Of a DNA stretch of 64,000 bases, positions 2,856-39,626 are shown in pieces (within the stretch, counting starts at the first letter, position 1; each line of letters opens with the position of its first letter). Origin of the DNA: Vitrella brassicaformis CCMP3155 (lineage: Eukaryota; Protista; Chromerida); assembly GCA_001179505.1 (NCBI GenBank), contig CDMY01000770.1, forward strand, positions 186,001 to 250,000, written 5' to 3'. A model generated the notes under the pieces. The model was given only the letters and a program-made list of their open reading frames with translations. It was not told the origin of the DNA and made no database searches. A program made the position numbers and the translations under genes.

Positions 2856-2894
<39 letters not shown>

Positions 2895-5800
2895 GAAATG
2901 AGAATACAAGTCCCGGCATCTTTCTTAGATATCTCACCGTCACGGATGAGCGGCAATGTGAATCCGGGCGGGCTGTGGATGAGAATGGCTGCCGTGTCGT
3001 CGGCAGTGGACACGAGCGTGGTTGGGAAGCTGAAGGCGACCACGACTTGAGACGTGTCCGAGGCTGTCCGCTTCGACGGCACCAAGGCCAGGTTGTACAG
3101 ACGCCGCACAGCAAAGGGGGGGAAGACCACGCCACCAGCCAGCCTGCAGACACACAAACTCACAAGTTGACGGTGTCTGCCGTCGTGTCAATGACTGCAT
3201 GCTATCCAGACATATAGACAGACCTTTGATATGGCTCAGTGGCATCAGAGTAGATGACCAGCATCCACCCCGACGTATTTGGCTGGTCCTCGCTCCGCCC
3301 CGGCTCGACGTCAGGCACCTTCACCGAATGTCGAAACACACACGTGCCATAGGCGGCCAGGACGCCCGTCAACGTCAGCCGCAAGACGTTGCTCAGCGAC
3401 CCGCCCAGTGTGGTGGTGCCGGTGTTGACCACCAGAGGGCTCGGGTGTGTCTGTGAGGCCCCGCTGCTCGTGGGCATCACATCAAGGTCGGCTGTGGGTG
3501 ACAATTCGTAGCCGTATGGCGCCCATAGCTCAACAGTGCTGCCGACCTGAGCAGAGGCCACAGAACAGACAGAGGAGACGGGCATGTGGGGATGATGGGT
3601 GGGATCACTGTCTCTTGCGTGTCTGAGTCTGCTCACCACTTACTGCATTGATGGGGCTCTTGACGCCGAAAATGACCGTGACGTTGGACTCGCTGGAAGT
3701 CACGTTGTACGGCAATAAATCATCGGGGGCGATCGACACGTCCAGGAAGGCAAAGTCGTCGAGAAAGGGAGGCAGCACATAGGCCACGTCAGCGGCGGTG
3801 TAGGCGACCGGGTCCTCATTGGTGTTGAAAGAAGTCACCAACGGAATGGAGTCCAGCAAATCGCCATTGCTGTCGAGAGTGCCCACCGAGGCCACGAACG
3901 ATGCCAGTGGCGGCCCGGGGAACAAAGGAGACATGAACGGCAACACAAAGGATACCACCTTGTCTGAAACAAGCAGATGTGTACCAACCAATGTGCGGGC
4001 ATTTCGATCCACCTCACACTCACCTTGTGGCAGAAAGGTCTGCAGCAGCTGGATGGTGAGCTCATTCTTGCCAGGGTTCATCGACCCAGCGCTCGACCTC
4101 GCCTCACACACAGCCCCATCAAAGCTGGCCGCAGTCACCTCCGAGTGGTCCAGCATTTCCGTCTCCCCAGGCGGACAGCCGCTTGCCGTGACCATGTCAT
4201 AGCCCTCTGGAAACGTCAATCGAATGGATCCGAGCTGCGGAACGGCCTGCTGCGGCCTCAGGGCGACCTCTATTGTCGATTGGGTGGCAGCTTTGAGGGT
4301 TCGAGGGGCAACGTAGGCGTCACGTATGCGGCCCATGATGGGGAAGATGGTGGATTGCTCTATAGGAACGACAGACGTGGTGCGGGCAGGGCTGCCACCA
4401 ACACTGGGGTCCTTTGTGCCCACCATCTCTACCTGCACCCAGACAGAAAGATTGATGCGTGTCATGTTATGTGCTGTGTGTGTGCATCTTCATTACGTGT
4501 TCACGCACTTGCCTGCCACACATTGGAGGGGTCCGTCCTCTGTCTCGGCTTGACCGGGTTGTCAACCGTGATCTTGGCGCCATAACCCACCCCCGCGAGC
4601 AGCCGCCGGTCGGTCCGTAGCTCGAAGTGGCAGGTGATGTTGCCCGTGCTGGAGCAGATGACGTCAGAAGTCGGCAGCGTGCCCATTGTGGTGGGTGTGG
4701 GGATGTCGGCCGTGTTGGTGGCCTGGGCGATGGCGGATGTGATGTCATACGTGAGGAGGGGGCCGAATGATGCCACGGGGGGATCGGCCGTGAAGAAGGC
4801 AGGCAGAGTGAAACTCACCTTGCACAAGCTGCCTGACGCTGAGGGGACACAGAGACACAACAAGAAATATCGATGGGTTACTTCGTGAGGGACTGCTCCC
4901 TCCCTCGCCCCTGCTCCTACATGATCCCGACTGGCAGTTGAAGGGTGCTACGAAGGCAAGAAAGATCCCATTGTTCTCCTGGTCGTAGTGCCTCTCCGTG
5001 TAGCCCCTGCCGCATAGTATGTTGCCATGTCCAACCCCTTTCTGTTCGTGAATGAATCCTGTGTCTCACTCACTGTATGCGAGCCTTCATCCCGGCCATG
5101 GGTGTCTTGGACACCCGATACGGCTGGAACTGCCAGTCAGACGCGAGAAACGTCGCCCGATGCCTCAATGGCTGCCCCGGCGCAATGTCCGTCACAAGGT
5201 AGGCCTCCGCCGCCCACTCAGTGGGGAAGAAACCCCTGATGGGCAGGCGGAAGTTCTCGAGTGTGTAGACAGGGCACTGGAAGTTGTTCTCGATCGAGAG
5301 GTCTGCGCCGGGGCAGTCGGTGGTGGGCGAGGCCGAAGCATCCAGGTTGATCCGGATAATCGGCGCCGCGTGACCCACCTAGACACAGAACAGAGGTACA
5401 TGTAACGAATGCATAGACAAGTGCGTGCCTTCTGACCTTCTCGAATTGGCATGTTGGCCTGGGAATGCCAGCTAGACGCCGGATCGAACACGCCCTGCAA
5501 ATGAAATGACCAGGCAATGCATCTATCCACCACCCAGCTTGCATATCATATACCGCGTTCGTTCACCTGTCGAGGTTTTGATCCCAGTAGGTGAGCGGGT
5601 GCAGGATAATTCGGAGCTCAGCTGACGGCGGCAAACGATTGGAACCCCCATCGCGGGCGAACAGCCGCACCGACACCTCGTCTATCTCATTCGCAGTGGC
5701 GTTGGCCCCGTCCACCAGCTCCGTGTTCAGTATCTCCATCGTGGTAAAGATCGGGTTGTGGTCCTCATTGACGATGGACTGCGGCACGGCGCTTCGTGTG

Positions 5801-17178: not shown

Positions 17179-19283
17179 ATGGAGAGCTCTTCAGCAGCAG
17201 CAAACGGCGTTCACTCTTCGACAGGCCCGGCAGATTCCCTTGCTGCCGTTCTCAAACCGTCTGACGCGCCGTCTGCCGAAGCAGTGACAGTCAAGGGCGT
17301 CGACTTCGATGAGAGGAGAGATCTGGACGGCCTGCTAGAGTCCTTCCTGACGTCTGGCTTCCAGGCGACCAATGTCGGGTTGGCCATCGAGGAGATCCGG
17401 CGGATGCTCGAAGGAAGGGAGCAGCAGCAGCAGCAGCACGAGAGTGAAGAAGCAAGCGAGAGGGAGGAGAGTGGAGATGACACAGATGATGCCGGCGATG
17501 GTGGGAGGGGACACTGCACGATATGGCTCGCATTCACGTCCAACATGATCTCGTCCGGTAGGCATGCACACACACACAAGTGTGCAAGGCAAGACACAAT
17601 GAAGCACCCACTGACTGGTTTGCGTGTTTCTGTCAGGTTTGCGTGAGGTATTTGTGTTTCTGGCTAAGCACCGGCTGATTGACGTGATCGTCACATCAGC
17701 TGGTGGAGTGGAGGAGGACTTCATCAAGTGCATGGCACCCACATTCATCGGTCACAAAGACATATGACGACCACACTCACCAAGCCAGCACATGATTGTC
17801 TCTGTCTGTCTGTCTGTCTGTCTGTCCATACACAGGCGATTTCACATGGCGTGGGAGGGAGCTGCGTGACAAGGGATGGAACCGCATCGGCAACTTGGTG
17901 GTGCCCAACGACAACTACTGTCGGTTTGAGGAGTGGCTGCAGCCGATTCTCGACGCCATGCTCGACGAACAGAGGACACACGGCACCATCTGGACTCCAT
18001 CCAAGGTGCGAACACATGAGTGAGAGCGGCTGGACCAGCAGTCCTGCCCACGTGTGTATTTGTGTTGGCAGATGATAGATCGTCTTGGGAAGGAGATTGG
18101 CCATGAGGAGTCCCTCTACTACTGGTGCCACAAGAACCACATACCCGTAAGCAAGCAGCTGGTGGAAGCCGTTCCGTCGACCTGCGCACGTGTGCGTCTG
18201 TCTTGTCTTTGTGGCAGGTGTACTGTCCTGGCCTCACTGACGGCTCCCTGGGCGACAACCTCTACTTCCACTCATACCGCAGCCCCGTAAGCCCACCCAC
18301 CCACCCACACACTCACTCAGTCAAGAGAACGACAGCTTTGCTCCACACGTTTGTTTGCTCTTTGCGATTGTGCGGCGGGTGCGTGCAGGGTTTGTTGCTG
18401 GACGTGATAGGCGACATCCGTGCCACTAACGACCGTGCGATCAAGTGCCGTCGGTCTGGCATGATCATACTGGGCGGGGGGCTGTCCAAGCACCACACGT
18501 GCAACGCCAACCTCATGCGCAACGGCGCCGACTACGCCGTCTACATCAACACTGGTACGCCACCAGGGGGGGGGGGGGGGGGGGATGANNNNNNNNNNNN
18601 NNNNNNNNNNNNNNNNNNNNNNNNNNNNNNNNNNNNNNNNNNNNNNNNNNNNNNNNNNNNNNNNNNNNNNNNNNNNNNNNNNNNNNNNNNNNNNNNNNNN
18701 NNNNNNNNNNNNNNNNNNNNNNNNNNNNNNNNNNNNNNNNNNNNNNNNNNNNNNNNNNNNNNNNNNNNNNNNNNNNNNNNNNNNNNNNNNNNNNNNNNNN
18801 NNNNNNNNNNNNNNNNNNNNNNNNNNNNNNNNNNNNNNNNNNNNNNNNNNNNNNNNNNNNNNNNNNNNNNNNNNNNNNNNNNNNNNNNGGGTGGATGATG
18901 GACGGATGGCATCTGCACGTCTGTGCGTATCGTCATTGCAGCCCAGGAGTATGACGGCTGTGACTCTGGCGCCAGGCCGGACGAGGCCGTCTCCTGGGGC
19001 AAGATCAAAAGCGAAGCCAAACCTGTCAAGGTCAGGACATAAATGCATTGCTTGCACCCACCAGCGTCGACGCGGGGAGTTTGTCTGATGCGCGTGTGCA
19101 CGTTTGCATCTGTATCAGGTTCATGGCGATGCGACTGTGCTGTTTCCCCTGATTGTGGCGGCCACCTTTGCCAAGCACCCCCATGCCAACAAGACGGCCG
19201 CGGACAAAGGGGAGGATGCGGAAAGCAGCAGAGAGCACAACCACCACCACAACGTGCCACTGCACGCTGTGACGGGGTGCTGA
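17179..19283 (+). CDS. DHS: Deoxyhypusine synthase
   Basis: Diagnostic motifs across exons: [28 protein letters not shown]|[103 protein letters not shown] (catalytic Lys present), [17 protein letters not shown]. Confidence 0.97.
18589..18888. other. Assembly gap (300 N) inside a DHS intron, next to a poly-G run
   Basis: N run follows ~19 G at 18566-18584. The flanking DHS exons join in frame (YINT|AQEY). Confidence 0.95.
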
Positions 19284-19380
19284 CGGGCGTGTGTGCTTGA
19301 TGCTACGTGTGGGGCTGGGCCTTTTCTGTCTGTGAATCGATGTTCTGATGTGGGGGAGTGCGTGCGTCGGCTTTATCGAC

Positions 19381-19467
19381 TTGATGGTGTGGACTGGTGT
19401 GTAATTATCGCTTGTGGAGTGGGAAACCGGGACGTCATGACTTCACGCATGCAGACATTCATTGACC
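19381..19467 (+). repeat. 87-bp direct repeat, copy 1 (left boundary of gene cassette)
   Basis: ttgatggtgtggactggtgtgtaattatcgcttgtggagtgggaaaccgggacgtcatgacttcacgcatgcagacattcattgacc; 86/87 identical to 21256-21342. Confidence 0.95.
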
Positions 19468-19629
19468 AATCAATGCACTCGTGCACAGTCAGCAGCTGGT
19501 GAATATGAAGGCATGTGTCAAGAGGCAAAACGGTGACATCCATTCCATTCCATTCCATGTAAGTGAATGCGATCAGCCACTTCACCACACACACAAACAC
19601 CCACAAACATCTGTCTTCTCCCTCGCCCC

Positions 19630-20754
19630 TCATCTCAGCGCCATCCCACTGTTGATGACACCGTCCGCCAGCTCGAAGTGGCTCAGCACGGCACGCCAGC
19701 GGGGCATCGACTCCGGGAACCGGTCGGCCAGCGGCTGAAACAAATTGCCATTCTCAGGTCGCTCGGTCGTCAACAGACTGATGTTGCGCCCACTCACCCA
19801 GAGATGGGCAGCGACGGTCTCGTTGGGCCGGAAGCCGCTCACAATCACGTCACGACGGTATGCTGGGTTGGCGTGATGCAGATTGCCGTCGTCCAAGCGG
19901 TAGTCGACAGCGATTCCCCCCTGCTGCTCGGTCATGGGCTCAGTCAGCAGACGGAGATAGCGGTCGTTATTGTGGCTGATGGCTTCACATAGCACCCTCC
20001 TGTCGTACCCCCCCTCCTCACGGCACCACCGCTCGAGCAGCGTGCGCAGGAGGAACGACGAGAAGAAGGGGAAAAGCAAGTGGTCCGATCGGATGACCGG
20101 ATCGCTCCGCTTGTAGCAGCTGCGATAGTCATGGTCGTCTGGCAGCTCACCCAACGGCACCACACGGAACGACTCATTGCCGATCCGATACGCCCCGTCG
20201 ATGCCTTGCTGCAGCGCCAGGTTGGTCCCCTGGTGTGTGAGGCTGTGGCCGATGGTCTTGTAGAGGGCCATGATGAGCGGCAGCTGGTGGAAGGCTGTTG
20301 GGGAGGGCAGCGCATTAGCCGACAGCCGCAGCGGCAGAGTGGCATTGGGTGTGAGCCGATGAATGGCGGCCAGCCGAATGAACCTCCCCATCGCTCGCCA
20401 CTCGCCGCCACTGCCCTGCTCCAGCACATGCAACACCTTCAAGCCGTTCCGCAGAGCTCGACGCTTGGCTCGACGGCTTGCGCACTGAAACACGTCGAAA
20501 ACCAGCACGTCCTCGAGCTCCAGACGACGGATGACCACCTCTATGCGCTGCTTGACGAGTGTGAGCATCTCGTCCACTATGGCGCGATTGCTGTCGTCGA
20601 TCTGTGCACGGAGCTTGTTTCGTCTGGCGGGGTCGGGTGACATGGCCATGTCTGCCGCCTTGGTGATGGCAAGGTCGCGCAGAGAGGGGACTGCCGGAGG
20701 GGCGGCGGGGGGCTGGGGAGTGGTGGGACGCATCTGATGCGATGACGACGCCAT
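19630..20754 (-). CDS. Intronless 374-aa protein of unknown function (probable lineage-expanded family)
   Basis: Uninterrupted ATG-to-stop ORF with protein-like composition and no microsatellite or intron signature, in a region where all other genes are spliced. It lies between the two 87-bp repeats. Confidence 0.8.
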   Translation of the reverse strand: MASSSHQMRPTTPQPPAAPPAVPSLRDLAITKAADMAMSPDPARRNKLRAQIDDSNRAIVDEMLTLVKQRIEVVIRRLELEDVLVFDVFQCASRRAKRRALRNGLKVLHVLEQGSGGEWRAMGRFIRLAAIHRLTPNATLPLRLSANALPSPTAFHQLPLIMALYKTIGHSLTHQGTNLALQQGIDGAYRIGNESFRVVPLGELPDDHDYRSCYKRSDPVIRSDHLLFPFFSSFLLRTLLERWCREEGGYDRRVLCEAISHNNDRYLRLLTEPMTEQQGGIAVDYRLDDGNLHHANPAYRRDVIVSGFRPNETVAAHLWVSGRNISLLTTERPENGNLFQPLADRFPESMPRWRAVLSHFELADGVINSGMALR

Positions 20755-21255
20755 CGGTGAGTGAGAGATCTGAATGAATCAAAAGTGGAAGGACACACAA
20801 ACGAGTGAATGGCAATCAGTCAGACGAGAGCCATGGGAGGGCGGGATGCTCTGCTCACCTGAGACAGGCACTGTGACAGCAAAGAGGCGGGGGGAGCGAG
20901 CCGTGGTGAATGAATGACTCTGCAGACAGACAGCACAGGCGTCCTGCAGCACCCGCCAGACTGATTGACACGCCGCTTTGCCTCACCGATGTCAGTCGAT
21001 GCGATGACGAGTGAGCCACCGACCGCCGCCAATCGATGGCCACCAGCACCTCAGAGTGATGCCCTCGCCGATGAGCGACGCAGCTCTGCTCAGACACACC
21101 AGCAGCAGCTGTGTGAAGCATTGTCAGTCGTCCTTTGTTTCTCTCGCTGCCCTCTCACCTTCGATGAGCGAACAAAAGCCTTCAAAATCTCACTCGACGA
21201 GAAGAGCTCGCTGTCGAATCAGTTCAACTGCCGCCGCCGTCAACCTCGAGAATGA

Positions 21256-21342
21256 TTGATGGTGTGGACTGGTGTGTAATTATCGCTTGTGGAGTGGGAA
21301 ACCGGGATGTCATGACTTCACGCATGCAGACATTCATTGACC
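21256..21342 (+). repeat. 87-bp direct repeat, copy 2 (right boundary of gene cassette)
   Basis: Same sequence as 19381-19467 with one C/T difference (gggacgtc vs gggatgtc). Confidence 0.95.
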
Positions 21343-21349
21343 GATCAGT

Positions 21350-24300
21350 GTACGCATAACCTCACAATGTGTTGTGTCCGTCACACGCAACCCATGCCAC
21401 ACACACACACACACACACACACATGCAGCCAGGCAGCCAGTCAGGCGGTCTCGCTAAGCACTAGCAGCACCACACACAGGAAGTGAAAACCGTCATCCGT
21501 CCATCGACATCTGCACGCACGTGTGTAGGTAGCCGTCCCGTCAGTCAGCCTCAAGGGCGGGTGCACTCATCCATCACATCGGCCATGAGCACGGAGGAAA
21601 GATCGAAGGGGTGACATTCTGACGACAAATATGCAGCAGCACCAGGCAACAACAGCACCAGGAGCAAGTGTCTCGACGTGCACGCAGACCAACGCCAGCA
21701 GCCAAGAGGAACGGGCAAGCAAAAAGTCGACCCGAGTAGCCGACACCAATGAATGAATGAGTGTGACAAGGGAAAAGCTCTTTCTTATCCTCACGAGTGT
21801 GCCCTCCGTGAGTGGTGTGTCGTGCCCCAGCACTCGACGAACACTCCTGAATCAGAGGGGCCGTCGAATGCAGACAGTCAACACACCACACACAGGTCCG
21901 TGTCTGTCTGTCTGTCTGTTGTGTTGCGTTGTGTCCGAATTAGCACCTCTAGACAAGGGCCAGCTACCAAGGACACCTCCCCTCCCTCTACCTCTCCCTC
22001 AGGCAGGCAGTCCAAAACAGTCGGCGGTCAAAAATGCTCCATCGAACACTCAAACGATGCCCTGCCCTGCCCGCCCTGCCGTCCATCCGGCCCCTCTTGA
22101 TTGCAAGTAACGTAAACAAACACAACACTACACAGAACACAACACAACACCAAACCACAACACGCACCTCCTTCCTCTGGGATCTCATCCACACATAGAC
22201 ACTCACTCACTCCATGGTCCATCCATCCGTCCGTCCGTCTATCGCTTTGCGTCAGGTCATTCACTCATCCGATGAAAAAACCTCAACCGATATATCAAAC
22301 CGCCGTTCGTCCATGTCCCTCTCTCCGTCCGAAGACACACGTGTTGCAGATGCACGAGCCACTCAGTCAGTCTGCAATGGTCGATCAGGCAGGCAGGCAG
22401 GCAGGCAGGCAGGGGAGAGAAACAACACACCAGATGAAGTGAGGCAGCCAAAACTACGATGGGTGGTGTGGAGTCTCAAGTAGGTATCAACGAGATCGAG
22501 ATGCATTCAGCAGGCAGGCAGGGAGCCACAATGAGCGAGCAAGTCATTAGGTGGGCATGATAGCATTAATGAAGGCAAGAAGCAAGCAGGGAGGAGCGAG
22601 CGAGGGACATCGGCAGACAGGGACGTAGGTGTGCTCAAGTGTCGCTCGAACAGACAGGACGGCTACGTGACGACAGTCAGCAAAAGATGTGTGCACTCAC
22701 ACCCGCCCACCCACGCGCACATGTCCGTCAGCACACACAGGCAGGGAAAAACGGCAAAACCACCACACACACACACACACGCACCCACACAGATGCAAAC
22801 TGTCGACACCGCCTCTCCTCTCCTCTCTATGCAGCCGACCAGCGATCCGCAGACAGACAGACAGACAGACAGACAGAAAGTCAATTCAGCCAATCTCCCA
22901 GGCAGTGTGGCAGCCACGCACTCATTCGTGCACACCCACACAGCGTGCCAGCCACAGCTGCCAGCAACCAATCTGTCGGTCGGTCGGTCAGTCAACAAAC
23001 ATACCTACCTACACTGCAAACACACGCACACAAGTACGTCCACACACACACACGTCGTCAGGCAACACGCAGTTTTTTGCTGTTTTTGGTCTTTTGTTGT
23101 TTTTGGCATCACCGGCCGGCTATTTAAATACCAACACCTCCCCTCTCCTCTCCTCTCCTCTCTCAGTGAGTCAGTTAGTTAGTCCCCTACACACACAGCC
23201 ACCTGGCCCTTAGTGCACGGAAAAAGGGGCCGCCTCGCTCCATCCATCCGGCCAGCCATCCGAATTCTCGACAATGACCGTGCGCGTGTATCTATCTCCT
23301 CTTCCTCTCCTCTCTGGTCAGCCAGTAAGTGCCTGTCGGTGACAGAAAATAGCAAGCCAGTTAGTTGGTTGTTCAAGGCAGACGCAGTACGCAGGTAGCT
23401 AAAGGCAGGCAGGGAGGCAGGGAGGTAGGCAGGCGCAAAAAGTCCGTCGCCCTGTGTGTGTGTGTGCGTTTCTTGTTGTTACGGTACGGTCGGCAGCTCC
23501 CATCATTGCTATACCTTCCACTCGGTACGTATCCCTCTCTGTCCCTCTCTGCTTGCCCGACACCACACACATGCACATGCACATGCACCCGGCACCGTCA
23601 TTAAAAAAGCAAACGACACAGCACATTCACTGGCCCCCATTTCCCGTTAGATAGACAGACATACACACAGGGAGAGACGTACGTGACATACGGCAGCAGG
23701 CGAGGAGAGACGAGACAGCCGAAGATGCTGTGCTGCGCTGTCCCCTGGTTGTATGCGCATGCAATGCACTCAACAACCACACAACCACCACACCACACGA
23801 CACAGACATGCACCGTACGTATCGCATCGCATCATGTTGTCTCTTTCTTTCTCTCTTTGTTCTCTTCTCTTCTTGAAAGTCAGCCTGTTGAAAGCTTCCC
23901 TTCCACCATCGCTCGCTCGCAGTTAGTCGGTCAGTCAGCATTAAATACCGCGCCACAGATAGACAGATACGTACTCAGACAGACAGACACACAGACACAG
24001 ACAGACAGACAGACAGACGTACGAACACAGGGAGAGAGACACACCCGGACGCACCGCATCGGGGGGGAGGATAGCACAGCACAGCACAGTACAGCAGTGG
24101 CCACTGCACTGCGCCAGTCCGCCTGTCCATCCCTCCATCGATCTGTGCGTGCGTGTGTGTGCTCCCTCTCTCCTCTCGCCATTGTAAACTACAAATAGAC
24201 ACACGCAGGCAGCCACGCAGCCAGCCAGACATCCCTCTCTCTCTCTCTCTCTCTCATGGTGTGCTGTTTGTGTGTCTTTTGTTCTGGAGCACAGCACGGA

Positions 24301-36568: not shown

Positions 36569-37080
36569 GGCTATCTGTGGTCGAGATGCTCTTGGCTGCG
36601 ATGTGATGTGATCTCGAGCGCCCTCTATGAGGCGGCTAATACCCGCTGCTCACGGTGTTACCAATTCCCTCCCTGACGCACACATACACAAAACCAGACA
36701 GACAGCAGGCACATGAGGGCGGCGCCGACGGGCGAATTTGCCTTCTCGCTGCCTGACTACCGCAGGGTGGACCGAGAAGGATGGCTCTCATTCAACCCAT
36801 CGATTTGAGGGTCAGCAGGCACAGTACGGGGCACCAGGCGCTCCTCGATGCGGAAGGCTGTCTGCGTCCATCTCCCGTCGTTTTCTGCGCTTCTCTCATC
36901 TGCGAGCTTAAGTTGGGGAGAGCAGAGGATTGGACTCATCGCAAATCGGCGAGAGAGCCTCCATATGGACTGCACATTCACACCAGCGCACGGCATGCAG
37001 TCAGCGCAGCCGTACGTATCAAGTCAAATGCATCCATGTGAAGCCGTTCCACTACATCCACCCATCAGGAGGCTGCTAAG

Positions 37081-37324
37081 TTGTGCAGGCACGGCAGACT
37101 CCAGCAGGCTGCGTGTGTCGGCGTCCAGGCCAAGCAGCTGCAGCACCACCGTGGTCGCACTTGAGCTGCAGCAGCGATCTCACGCTTGAGCAGACGAAGT
37201 CGACGAAGTCGGAGACGCCAGTGGGACCTAATGGGTTGGACACGCAGACATACGAACAGACAGACAGACAGACAGACAGACATTCACATGCAGGTCGACC
37301 TGCCCTCCCACCTGTGAGTTCGAC
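37081..37324 (-). pseudogene. Degenerate duplicate of the 3' exon and preceding intron of LRR-like paralogue 2
   Basis: Aligns with 37630-37898 (gcagactccagcaggctgcgtgtgtcggc.., gagctgcagcagcgatctca.., ggacacgcagaca.., cacctgtgag). A 1-nt insertion turns QLRCRAVFLQLLG into QLKCDHGGAAAAW. Confidence 0.8.
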
Positions 37325-37542
37325 AGCCAGTCTGGTGGTGTACGGGAGTCCATGATGCCTGACTGCATGTATGGGACCGTCTCGACACACGCGTCAACAA
37401 TCCTCACTTCAGCATGGACCACATAAACGTCTCACGCCGTGCAACATCTGCACATACATATACAAACGGCACGTGCACCAATTGATTCGAATGCAGGCAC
37501 GTCACATCAAACCGTCCCACTCAACGCAACGCCCGCAGCTAT

Positions 37543-39626
37543 CTATCCACTGTGGATGGCAGCGATGGCCAGCTTGTTGTCCTGCTGCATGCACACTATG
37601 AGCGGGCCCCCGACGCTGCTACATTGCTCAGGCACAGCAGACTCCAGCAGGCTGCGTGTGTCGGCATCCAGGCCGAGCAGCTGCAAGAACACCGCCCTGC
37701 ACCTGAGCTGCAGCAGCGATCTCATACTCGAACAGGCGAACTCGACAAACTCGGAGACGCCGGCGGGAACTGAGGGATTGGACACGCAGACAGACAGACA
37801 GACAGACAGACAGGCAGACATTCACATACAGGTCTCTCAGTGGGTCTGTCTACTCACCCTCCCACATACCCACCCACCCACCCACCTGTGAGATCGACAC
37901 CCAGTGTTGTGATGTGTGGGAATTCATCTGCATGGTCCCCTATGCTGATGACATCCCCGCTGCCCAACCCCCGGATAGCAATCGCAGTCACCATGTCAAA
38001 CTCCCGCTCCCACCCGATCGCCTTGATGGCCTCCACCGCCCACTCCTCGGTCATGTCACTGGTGTTGAGTCGCCGCAAGTTGGGCATCTTGCTGGCCAGC
38101 TGGATGCCGGCCGCCAATGCCGTGTGCTTGTCGAGTGACAAGAACGACGCCTGCGGCATGGGCTGGATCTGTTCGATGAGGGCGGGTGCAGGGTTGGTGG
38201 GGGCGGGCTGTGCAGGCTGGTCGCCACCGAGCACAGTCACACTCGTGGCCTTGTTGAATGCAAGGCCTCTGGCCATGTCGAGCATCGCAGGCGTGACCGG
38301 GGTGGCGAGGTGGAACTCAACGTCCACGAGCACCCGAGCCGCCTGGTCGGCCAGCTGGCGCAGGACAGTCTCGAGGATGAGAGAGGGGGCAGCGGGGAAG
38401 AGGGGGCAGTACAGGACGCTCAGGTGAAATCGCGGAGCAGCACTGGTGAAGCTGATGGGGACGTCTCCGATGCACACCGCACTGGCGAATGACTGGAGGG
38501 CCACGGCTATGTCGAACACCCCTGGGCCCACAATCGACTCGTCGACGAAGTTGACCTTCAGCGACCTGAGGGAACGACGACAGCCTCGTGCCACGAGGGT
38601 CGACCCCAGCTCCTAAGAAAGGAAAACAGACAGGAACATAGTAAGCATCATTGCATCTGTCGTCCATTGCGTGTTAGCAGCCTGCTGACCTGCAACCGTG
38701 TGCACCATACTGTCAATACCTCTGGATCCATCAGGTCGCCGGGGACCTCAATCGTCCCGATATCCTCCAAGTTCGCCAGTGGCCCCGGCTGTCCCTCCTC
38801 TGCTGCGACAGGCACCTCCTCCAGCACCTCGGCCTTCTGGTCGACCGTCGAGGGCACGTCGAACACCCTCAGGCACCGCGACGAGCCGACGAGTGGTCCC
38901 AGTGTGTCGATGTGCTCGTGCGCCTGCACCCGCTCCAGCGACGGGGCGCGCCAGCCGCGGTTTCCGATGCCGCGATGGTGGGCAGTGAGGCCGCTAATGG
39001 ATGTGAGGGCGGGGAGGGAGGGGGGCGGGGCACACACAGGGGGTAGGGTGGGGTTTTTTGATCCGCCCGACGGACAGCATATCGACCTCGCTGAGCTCAG
39101 CCGCCTCAAATGTGATTGCCGTGAGTGAGCCGTCAGGGATGTCGGCCGCCTCTCCCCGCCTCTCTGCCTCTCCCCTCTTCTCTGCGACCATCGCTGTGCG
39201 GCCCTCTGTGTGGCCTTCGATGAGCGCCGTGATGACGTTCAGACACCAGGCCCCCCCGCCAGCCGGGTGACAGCACCAGATGCGGGTGAGTTTGGGCATG
39301 CGGCCGCCCCACGTCTTGGCCACGTTGACGGGCATCGTCTGCCAGAAGGCCCTGTCGGCGGCCCTGGAGGAGTCGATGTCGAGCTGGCGGCACTGAGCCC
39401 CGGCCCCCATGGCGATGCTGTTGTTGAAGAGCGGCCACACGCCATAGCCCGAGATGTGAATGAGATCCTCACACGACAAACGCCTCCCAGCCTACAACAG
39501 CAAGAAGATCCAGGATTGTCGAATGCATCAAATTTGGCCTGCTGCCGGTCTTACCGGTCCTTCATTGATTGGTCGTCGTCCCGACTGATGGACCAAACGA
39601 AACGACGTGCCTGTGGCGCTACTCAT
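37543..39626 (-). CDS. LRR-like lineage-expanded family protein, paralogue 2 (frameshift in A6 run at 39054-39059; possibly a pseudogene)
   Basis: Exons in ORFs 38994-39479, 38648-39109, 37854-38594 and 37543-37821 are homologous to paralogue 1 (PSLPALTSISGL, WRAPSLERV, GPLANLEDIGTIEV, LVARGCRRSLRSLKV). Start approximate (MSSATGTSFRL). Confidence 0.7.

What the first reader, a model, noticed from the sequence alone, without database searches (positions are those of the whole stretch)
19381..21342. Intronless gene cassette bounded by an 87-bp direct repeat downstream of DHS
Seen: two 87-bp copies (86/87 identical, 19381-19467 and 21256-21342) enclose 1.79 kb holding one complete intronless 374-aa ORF (19630-20754, minus strand) and ~500 bp of its upstream region, including a GAGCTCGCT variant of the promoter motif at 21204. 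Every other gene here has introns. I found no TIRs, poly-A tail, PBS/PPT or transposase/RT motifs. Inference: a recent insertion of a gene-plus-promoter module with an unusually long target duplication, or a short-terminal-repeat (TRIM-like) unit. Either could be the route by which this orphan family spreads, i.e. a possible undescribed gene-mobilising system.
Basis: partly seen in the sequence, partly recalled or inferred. Interest (0 to 1): 0.8.

Follow-up and report, generated by a model that had tools for sequence, protein, structure and literature searches.

The report
Gene copy inserted with 98-base duplication
In the alga Vitrella brassicaformis, a 1.8-kb piece carrying one member of a large, fast-evolving, alga-specific gene family was pasted in just behind the deoxyhypusine synthase gene, duplicating 98 bases of the target; it looks like DNA-break repair, not a new jumping element.

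Summary
Two copies of a 98-nt stretch (19381-19478 and 21256-21353; 86/87 over the first 87 nt, 94/98 overall) occur nowhere else in the 72.7-Mb Vitrella brassicaformis genome. They enclose 1,777 nt holding a 374-aa ORF.

The enclosed DNA matches a paralogue on contig C1028 from 19476 to about 21244, so homology stops within 3-12 nt of each repeat. That fits an inserted segment with a target-site duplication. The left junction also occurs in a separate JGI contig and an MMETSP transcript, so an assembly error is unlikely.

It is not a TRIM, TIR transposon, Helitron or retrocopy. The repeat is single-locus. There are no TIRs, PBS/PPT or poly-A. The insert carries upstream DNA with two GT-AG introns in the deposited gene model, and its upstream end is a breakpoint inside a head-to-head paralogue pair.

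The protein belongs to a family of at least 116 loci, seen only in Vitrella. It has dN/dS near 1, no nuclease, recombinase or RT fold, and a weak SUKH-like middle domain.

Of 46 family genes tested, one other (contig C929) has the same layout: a 129-nt locus-specific repeat around an in-frame coding insert. Earlier notes of this scan list similar cassettes on other Vitrella DNA.

Best reading: break-repair or template-switch insertion, occasionally recurrent.

The parts
19381..19478 (.). Repeat copy R1 (target-site duplication, left). It lies 97 nt after the DHS stop and is transcribed.
   Evidence: An 86-aa ORF spanning 19376-19633 is found exactly in a JGI contig and an MMETSP transcript.
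21256..21353 (.). Repeat copy R2 (target-site duplication, right). 94/98 identical to R1; all four differences are transitions.
19479..21255 (-). Inserted segment X (1,777 nt): one family gene with 152 nt of 3' flank and 501 nt of 5' flank.
   Evidence: Homology to the C1028 paralogue locus (L006/L025) runs 19476-21189 and 21210-21242, about 21244 by eye.
19630..20754 (-). 374-aa uninterrupted ORF of a Vitrella-only family; dN/dS about 1 against its closest paralogues.
   Evidence: The AF2 model has pLDDT 92.7.
20755..21244 (-). Upstream region (5' UTR and promoter) shared with paralogues at 83-95% identity, which is more conserved than the coding sequence.
20770..20858 (-). Intron 2 of deposited model CEM33084.1 (GTGAGC...CAG, 89 nt).
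20920..21023 (-). Intron 1 of the deposited model (GT...AG, 104 nt). Exon 1 is 21024-21121 and exon 2 is 20859-20919.
21245..21255 (.). 11-nt filler between the end of paralogue homology and R2.
   Evidence: and reading.
19476..19478 (.). 3-nt overlap (CAC) shared by the end of R1 and the start of paralogue homology; junction microhomology.
19119..19283 (+). Last exon and stop codon of the deoxyhypusine synthase gene, the host locus of the insertion.

Best explanation
A 1.78-kb DNA segment was copied or moved from a paralogue locus of a large Vitrella-specific gene family and inserted about 100 nt behind the DHS stop codon. It was not a processed RNA copy and not a transposon. The insertion came from repair of a staggered break or from a replication template switch (MMBIR/FoSTeS type). 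The 98 nt of target between the two strand breaks, or the stretch re-copied after the switch back, ended up on both sides of the insert. Shown: the repeat is locus-specific, the insert's limits match the limits of paralogue homology, there is junction microhomology and filler, mobile-element hallmarks are absent, and the left junction is independently supported. Inferred: the repair mechanism itself, and that the donor copy has been lost, is unassembled, or has diverged fast. The gene stays under selection: the ORF is intact despite dS of 0.2-0.4 and dN/dS near 1. It most likely encodes a fast-evolving binding or adaptor protein with a weak SUKH-like middle domain. The same kind of event happened at least once more in the family, at C929, where it made an in-frame fusion. 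It is therefore an occasional route of dispersal and domain shuffling, secondary to local cluster duplication.
For: - The repeat is 94/98 identical and occurs only twice in the genome.
- X is homologous to the C1028 copy from 19476 to about 21244, that is 3 nt inside R1's end and 12 nt short of R2's start. There is a 3-nt overlap at the left junction and an 11-nt filler at the right.
- The C1028 and C679 loci stay homologous for about 600 nt beyond the point matching X's upstream end, because they are head-to-head gene pairs. X's end is therefore a breakpoint, not an element terminus.
- X carries upstream DNA with two GT-AG introns in the deposited model and has no poly-A, so it is a DNA-level copy.
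- No TIRs, tRNA or Rfam RNA. No nuclease, recombinase or RT fold.
- The A/R1/X junction is present in a JGI contig and an MMETSP transcript. The longest exact stretches shared by R1 and R2 are 52 and 34 nt, below the assembly k-mer of 75 (PMC4501334).
- A second case exists at C929: a locus-specific 129-nt repeat around a 1,041-nt coding-only, in-frame insert. Its cassette limits and duplication length differ from this one.
Against: - Age mismatch. The repeats differ by 1-4% (95% CI up to 10%), but X differs from every assembled paralogue by dS 0.17-0.46 and sits on a long terminal branch. A simple copy-and-paste with a surviving donor would predict about 20 differences in 98 nt (P about 7e-7).
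- This needs a lost or unassembled donor, a cut-and-paste relocation, faster change in the gene than in its flanks, or homogenisation of the two repeats.
- No empty site could be examined.
- The right-hand junction (X/R2/B) has no independent support.
- Target duplications near 100 nt are unusual for plain end-joining.
Confidence: 0.6

Rival explanations
1. A dedicated, still undescribed trans-acting activity in Vitrella inserts gene cassettes with target duplications of about 100-130 nt and drives dispersal of fast-evolving families. It could be an endonuclease that nicks the two strands about 100 nt apart, as the R9 non-LTR element does.
For: - Two independent family insertions have locus-specific duplications of similar size, 98 and 129 nt.
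- In both, the repeats are far less diverged than the insert is from any paralogue, as a conservative move would give.
- Earlier first-reader notes of this scan list over a dozen cassettes between 35-850-nt direct repeats elsewhere in this genome. These are unchecked leads.
- R9 elements make a 126-bp duplication (cited in PMC6895275).
Against: - The cassette ends differ: gene plus 500 nt upstream here, coding sequence only at C929.
- There is no shared terminal motif, and X's upstream end is a mid-intergenic breakpoint.
- Only 2 of 46 family genes show the pattern.
- The other bracketing repeats are multi-copy or part of the family unit.
- No enzyme is linked to the cassettes.
- Follow-ups of the other notes each judged them repair products.
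Confidence: 0.13
2. Pseudo-target duplication. The gene has long been at this site, and one 98-nt copy arose later by a separate local event, such as a templated insertion during repair. Alternatively, the two copies are old and kept alike by gene conversion or by cycles of pop-out and re-integration through the repeats.
For: - The repeats are 5-20 times less diverged than X is from its nearest paralogue.
- A 'pseudo-TSD' model has been proposed for long duplications flanking HERV-K (PMC5488345).
Against: - A later, unrelated 98-nt duplication would have to land within about 10 nt of both limits of paralogue homology.
- The same architecture recurs at C929.
- Homogenisation of 98-nt repeats 1.8 kb apart is possible but untested.
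Confidence: 0.15
3. Assembly artefact: a small contig wrongly placed between two overlapping contig ends, near the 300-N gap at 18589-18888.
For: - This is a short-read velvet, SSPACE, GapFiller and IMAGE assembly (PMC4501334).
- There is an N gap 500 nt away.
Against: - The A/R1/X junction is reproduced exactly in a JGI contig of 2,935 nt and in an MMETSP transcript.
- R1 and R2 differ at four positions and share no 75-mer.
- There are no Ns at either junction.
Confidence: 0.04
4. LINE-mediated retrocopy of an mRNA with an exceptionally long target duplication.
For: - The ORF is uninterrupted, as in most family members.
- Long duplications occur with some retroelements.
Against: - No poly-A or A-rich tail at the 3' end.
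- The insert contains about 490 nt of upstream DNA, including two GT-AG introns of the deposited model.
- The whole family is intronless in its ORF, so an intronless ORF says nothing here.
- The C929 insert lacks both UTRs.
Confidence: 0.05
5. TRIM-like or LTR-type element whose terminal repeats are R1 and R2.
For: Direct repeats of about 100 nt enclose about 1.8 kb.
Against: - R has only two copies in the genome.
- No PBS or PPT, and the 5 nt outside the repeats differ.
- The internal region is an ordinary family gene whose paralogues lack R.
Confidence: 0.01

Closest known systems
Templated or ectopic insertions made by break repair or replication template switching (MMBIR/FoSTeS, staggered-break fill-in)
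   Same: A non-mobile genomic segment is inserted at an unrelated site. Target sequence is duplicated on both sides. The junctions show microhomology and a short filler. Insert limits and duplication length vary between events.
   Different: A duplication of about 100 nt around a complete, still-selected gene is not the usual description, and no donor of matching age survives. The mechanism is inferred, not shown.
R9 rDNA-specific non-LTR retrotransposon of rotifers (126-bp target duplication; Gladyshev and Arkhipova 2009, as cited in PMC6895275)
   Same: Target duplication in the 100-130-nt range, created by distant nicks on the two strands.
   Different: R9 is an autonomous, site-specific RT-encoding element. 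Here there is no RT, no element termini and no site specificity, and the insert is a host gene with upstream DNA.
HERV-K (HML-2) insertions with 111-250-bp target duplications (PMC5488345)
   Same: An unconventionally long duplication flanks an insertion, and the same question arises of true versus pseudo target duplication.
   Different: Those inserts are proviruses or solo LTRs; this one is a cellular gene copy without LTRs.
TRIM (terminal-repeat retrotransposon in miniature)
   Same: Short direct repeats bracket a small internal region.
   Different: A TRIM has multi-copy terminal repeats, a PBS and PPT, and a 5-bp duplication. None of these is present.
Lineage-specific, fast-evolving SUKH or F-box-associated adaptor families (for example FBXO3-type SUKH, Smi1/Knr4, bacterial SUKH immunity proteins)
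   Same: Large species-specific expansion, clustered arrays, dN/dS about 1, a middle domain weakly SUKH-like by fold, and two distant members that UniProt labels as F-box proteins.
   Different: No Pfam SUKH or F-box match for this protein or 39 relatives. The structural Z scores of 4.1-5.3 are below a reliable level.

Membership tests
TRIM / LTR-type element | Terminal repeats belong to a multi-copy family | tested here: not met
   R has exactly two copies in the genome, both at this locus.
TRIM / LTR-type element | PBS after the 5' repeat, PPT before the 3' repeat, and a short (about 5 bp) target duplication outside the repeats | tested here: not met
   Reading: there is no tRNA-complementary site after R1, and the outer flanks differ.
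TIR DNA transposon / MITE / Pack-type gene capture | Terminal inverted repeats and a short fixed-length target duplication | tested here: not met
   No inverted repeat at the ends of X. The duplication is 98 nt here and 129 nt at C929.
Helitron | 5'-TC...CTRR-3' ends with a 3' hairpin and no target duplication | tested here: not met
   A 98-nt duplication is present, and the ends do not fit.
Processed retrocopy (LINE-mediated) | Poly-A tail at the 3' end; no promoter or intron sequence | tested here: not met
   No A-run next to R1. About 490 nt of upstream DNA with two GT-AG introns of the deposited model lie inside the insert. Splicing itself was not verified with RNA-seq.
Insertion with true target-site duplication (any mechanism) | Insert limits coincide with the inner edges of the repeats | tested here: met
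   Paralogue homology runs from 19476 to about 21244; the repeat inner edges are at 19478 and 21256.
Insertion with true target-site duplication (any mechanism) | An empty site with a single copy of the duplicated sequence in a relative or another haplotype | not testable with these tools
   No second Vitrella genome is available.
Insertion with true target-site duplication (any mechanism) | Repeat divergence matches insert-to-donor divergence | tested here: not met
   4/98 differences in the repeat against dS 0.17-0.46 to the nearest paralogues.
Transposase / recombinase / RT-encoding element | The encoded protein has a nuclease, recombinase or RT fold or domain | tested here: not met
   No Pfam match, no PDB sequence match, no Foldseek match, and VIA best Z 6.8 on partial generic matches.
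SUKH superfamily | SUKH alpha/beta fold or a Pfam SMI1_KNR4/SUKH match | tested here: inconclusive
   Residues about 116-248 align to 2icg (Z 5.3, 112 aligned residues), 2prv (4.8), SKP1-FBXO3 9kbf (4.9) and Knr4 5j1b (4.1). No Pfam match in 40 members.
F-box proteins | F-box motif detectable at the N-terminus | tested here: not met
   No F-box match in this protein or 39 relatives. Only sub-threshold matches in distant members P0163 and P0170, outside the region shared with this protein.

The most novel reading that the evidence does not exclude
Vitrella may have a recurrent, mechanistically specific way of relocating gene cassettes of fast-evolving families. The cause could be paired nicks or a template switch of roughly Okazaki-fragment size. 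It would leave locus-specific target duplications of about 100-130 nt and sometimes build in-frame fusions, as at C929. That would be an undescribed route of gene dispersal and domain shuffling, not scattered repair accidents.
Probability: 0.13. Interest if true: 0.8.

Novelty: new member of a known kind. Interest (0 to 1): 0.4.

Why it matters
On its own this is a tidy example of how a non-mobile gene can be dispersed by break repair, with the target duplication still readable. It becomes more interesting for three reasons:
- A second family member shows the same architecture and has produced an in-frame fusion.
- The shared roughly 270-aa module of this family sits behind many different N-terminal modules in Vitrella (CBM25, TPR, cyclin, weak F-box-like), as repeated insertions of this kind would produce.
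- The scan has flagged many other cassettes between long direct repeats in this genome.

A genome-wide census could show whether chromerids use an unusual duplication pathway to build their lineage-specific families. The family itself, with at least 116 loci, a confident predicted structure with no clear match among solved structures and dN/dS near 1, is a candidate adaptor or immunity-like repertoire in a close free-living relative of apicomplexan parasites.

Tried and rejected
- **Independent contigs.** Both metagenome scans, one with a 30-mer of R and one with the protein, returned nothing; records of the window's own genome may be left out there. An exact look-up of junction-spanning ORFs worked for the left junction only.
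- **Donor or excision scar.** The only extra matches to the upstream region, at C251 and C40, are short promoter-like pieces. No donor was found.
- **Mosaic or gene-conversion test.** No 120-nt window of X exceeds about 94.5% identity to any paralogue in hand, so there is no sign of a recent conversion tract.
- **Other bracketing repeats in family loci, rejected as target duplications.**
  - C510: a 45-nt hairpin motif that also occurs at two other loci.
  - C868: a 209-nt repeat that is part of the family's own flank, with 13 matches.
  - C406: a 1.05-kb repeat with three or more copies on its contig.
  - C1000: a 0.9-kb repeat at 75% identity, ambiguous.
- **Protein function.**
  - The ESM Atlas gave only scores of 0.88 or lower to unrelated multigene families.
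  - There is no Pfam or PDB sequence match.
  - An F-box in the N-terminus is not supported.
- **Spliced model.** No search was made with a joined (spliced) sequence. The deposited model P0084 was only mapped back onto the window in a script to find its exon borders.

Full report
**Source.** The window is Vitrella brassicaformis CCMP3155, contig C770:186001-250000, from the 72.7-Mb, 1064-scaffold assembly (PMC4501334).

**Observation.**
- Two direct copies, 19381-19478 and 21256-21353, are 94/98 identical. All four differences are transitions.
- A whole-genome search finds only these two copies.
- Apart from microsatellites and one 540-bp tandem duplication, this is the only complex direct repeat of 50 nt or more in the window.
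- Between the copies lie 1,777 nt holding a 374-aa ORF at 19630-20754 on the minus strand.
- The neighbouring gene is deoxyhypusine synthase. Pfam DS matches exon 18341-18559 at E=2e-18, and the stop codon is at 19281-19283, 97 nt before R1.
- One correction to the finding: only the ORF is intronless. The deposited model CEM33084.1 (432 aa) joins two short upstream exons through GT-AG introns of 104 and 89 nt. I mapped that model in a script only. No search was run with a joined sequence.

**Assembly check.**
- An 86-aa ORF covering 19376-19633 spans the last bases of the DHS flank, all of R1 and the first 155 nt of the insert. It is present letter for letter in a 2,935-nt JGI contig and in an MMETSP transcript.
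- That JGI contig has the same length as the one encoding P0085, the C-terminal 339 aa of the ORF.
- R1 and R2 share exact runs of only 52 and 34 nt. The assembly used k=75, so the two copies were never confounded in the graph.
- The right-hand junction has no independent support.

**What the enclosed DNA is.**
- The ORF belongs to a family with at least 116 matches in this genome. Many sit in clusters on contigs C350, C240, C377, C292 and C274.
- All hits in the word search are Vitrella, unnamed JGI contigs or unnamed MMETSP transcripts.
- A profile search of 1.84 billion representatives gave 129 hits. Nine of the ten most distant ones I looked up are named Vitrella; the tenth is an unnamed JGI contig.
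- The insert matches the paralogue on C1028 from 19476 to 21189 and again from 21210 to 21242, about 21244 by eye.
- Homology therefore starts 3 nt inside the end of R1 and stops 12 nt before R2. The left junction has a 3-nt overlap (CAC). The right junction has an 11-nt filler.
- This coincidence at both ends is the main evidence that X is an inserted segment and R its duplicated target.

**Not a defined mobile element.**
- C1028 and C679 carry head-to-head gene pairs. They remain homologous for about 600 nt beyond the point matching X's upstream end. That end is a breakpoint in an intergenic region, not a terminus.
- There are no TIRs, no tRNA or Rfam RNA, and no poly-A, PBS or PPT.
- The upstream 435 nt, which includes the model's introns, is shared with paralogues at 83-95% identity. 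The copy was therefore made from DNA.

**Age problem.**
- Against its closest relatives, X has dS of 0.17-0.23 in the N-terminal half and 0.28-0.46 in the C-terminal half. dN/dS is about 1 in both halves.
- No 120-nt window of X exceeds about 94.5% identity to any paralogue in hand.
- X sits on a long terminal branch in a quick, unfinished tree.
- The repeats differ by only 4/98. At 22% divergence that has a probability of about 7e-7.
- So the donor is lost or unassembled, or the segment was moved rather than copied, or the gene changes faster than its flanks, or the repeats are being homogenised. I cannot tell which.
- An ORF that stays open at this divergence implies selection. This is an inference.

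**Is it a family habit?**
- I tested 46 family genes in 45 loci for bracketing repeats.
- One other clear case exists, at C929. A 129-nt repeat at 91.5% identity, with only two copies in the genome, flanks 1,041 nt that are coding sequence only.
- That insert lies in frame near the end of a 784-codon ORF, so the host's 43-residue basic tail appears on both sides.
- Its insert is also far more diverged from any paralogue (66-70% nucleotide identity) than its repeats are from each other.
- Four other bracketing repeats are not target duplications, or are ambiguous.
- Earlier notes of this scan list many cassettes between long direct repeats on other Vitrella DNA. Two of them are the C510 and C929 loci I re-found. 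The follow-ups on the others judged them repair products. These are leads, not evidence.

**The protein.**
- AlphaFold2 gives a confident model: pLDDT 92.7 for the whole protein and 92.8 for residues 115-374.
- There is no Pfam, PDB-sequence or Foldseek match.
- VIA-align gives only middling scores.
  - The C-terminal part (residues 250-374) resembles generic TBP-like or phosphoglucomutase domain-4 alpha/beta folds, with Z of 5-6.
  - The middle part (about 116-248) aligns to several SUKH structures: 2icg (Z 5.3), 2prv (4.8), SKP1-FBXO3 (4.9) and Knr4 (4.1).
  - All of these are below a reliable level.
- There is no nuclease, recombinase or RT fold.
- A profile comparison shows that the module shared with distant members covers residues of about 100-374.
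- That module follows different N-terminal modules elsewhere in Vitrella: CBM25, TPR, Cyclin_C and sub-threshold F-box-like.

**Comparison with known systems.**
- Target duplications of about 100 nt or more are known for the R9 retrotransposon (126 bp, cited in PMC6895275).
- They are also known for some HERV-K insertions (111-250 bp, PMC5488345), where a 'pseudo-TSD' alternative is discussed.
- Unlike those, the insert here is a cellular gene copy without element features.

**Verdict.**
- The long-target-duplication insertion is supported, and the TRIM reading is refuted.
- A dedicated mobilising system is not supported, but it is not excluded either, given the second case.

Noticed in passing
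L046 = G000:C929:77090-84112, locus coordinates 2858-4156: A family coding sequence of 1,041 nt is inserted in frame near the 3' end of a 784-codon ORF, between locus-specific 129-nt direct repeats at 91.5% identity. The host's 43-residue basic tail is duplicated on both sides, giving a natural fusion gene.
   Followed up: partly
window 20755-21244 and the matching regions of L004-L010: The upstream non-coding region of this subfamily is 83-95% identical between dispersed copies, while synonymous sites of the ORF differ by 0.17-0.46 and dN/dS is about 1. So the promoter and 5' UTR are conserved or homogenised next to a diversifying coding sequence.
   Followed up: partly
L011 = G000:C510:189575-193675, locus coordinates 1054-1097 and 2790-2834: A 45-nt hairpin-forming motif lies on both sides of a family gene. 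It also occurs at C309:66432 and C335:98154, so it is a dispersed hairpin element, not a target duplication.
   Followed up: partly
proteins P0002 and P0001 (JGI contigs): P0002 is identical to the window ORF over about the first 166 residues and identical to the C679 paralogue (P0003) over the rest. P0001 equals the window ORF except for the last five residues, which follow another paralogue. These are either assembly chimeras at shared stretches or true recombinants.
   Followed up: no
window 18567-18888: A poly-G run is followed by a 300-N assembly gap inside the DHS gene, between the exon ending near 18559 and the next exon.
   Followed up: no
window 37069-37820: A tandem duplication of about 540 bp; the copies are 84-87% identical.
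   Followed up: no
L027 = G000:C406:17030-23947 and L036 = G000:C1000:201226-208326: Family genes here are bracketed by about 1-kb direct repeats: 93% identity with three or more copies on C406, and about 75% identity on C1000. The C406 gene carries a CBM25 domain upstream of the family module. The origin of these repeats is unresolved.
   Followed up: partly
L006/L025 = G000:C1028:108000-117999; also C679 and C292: The closest relatives of the window gene are arranged as head-to-head pairs: a full-length member and a member matching only residues 105-371, with about 1.3 kb between them, duplicated as a unit.
   Followed up: partly
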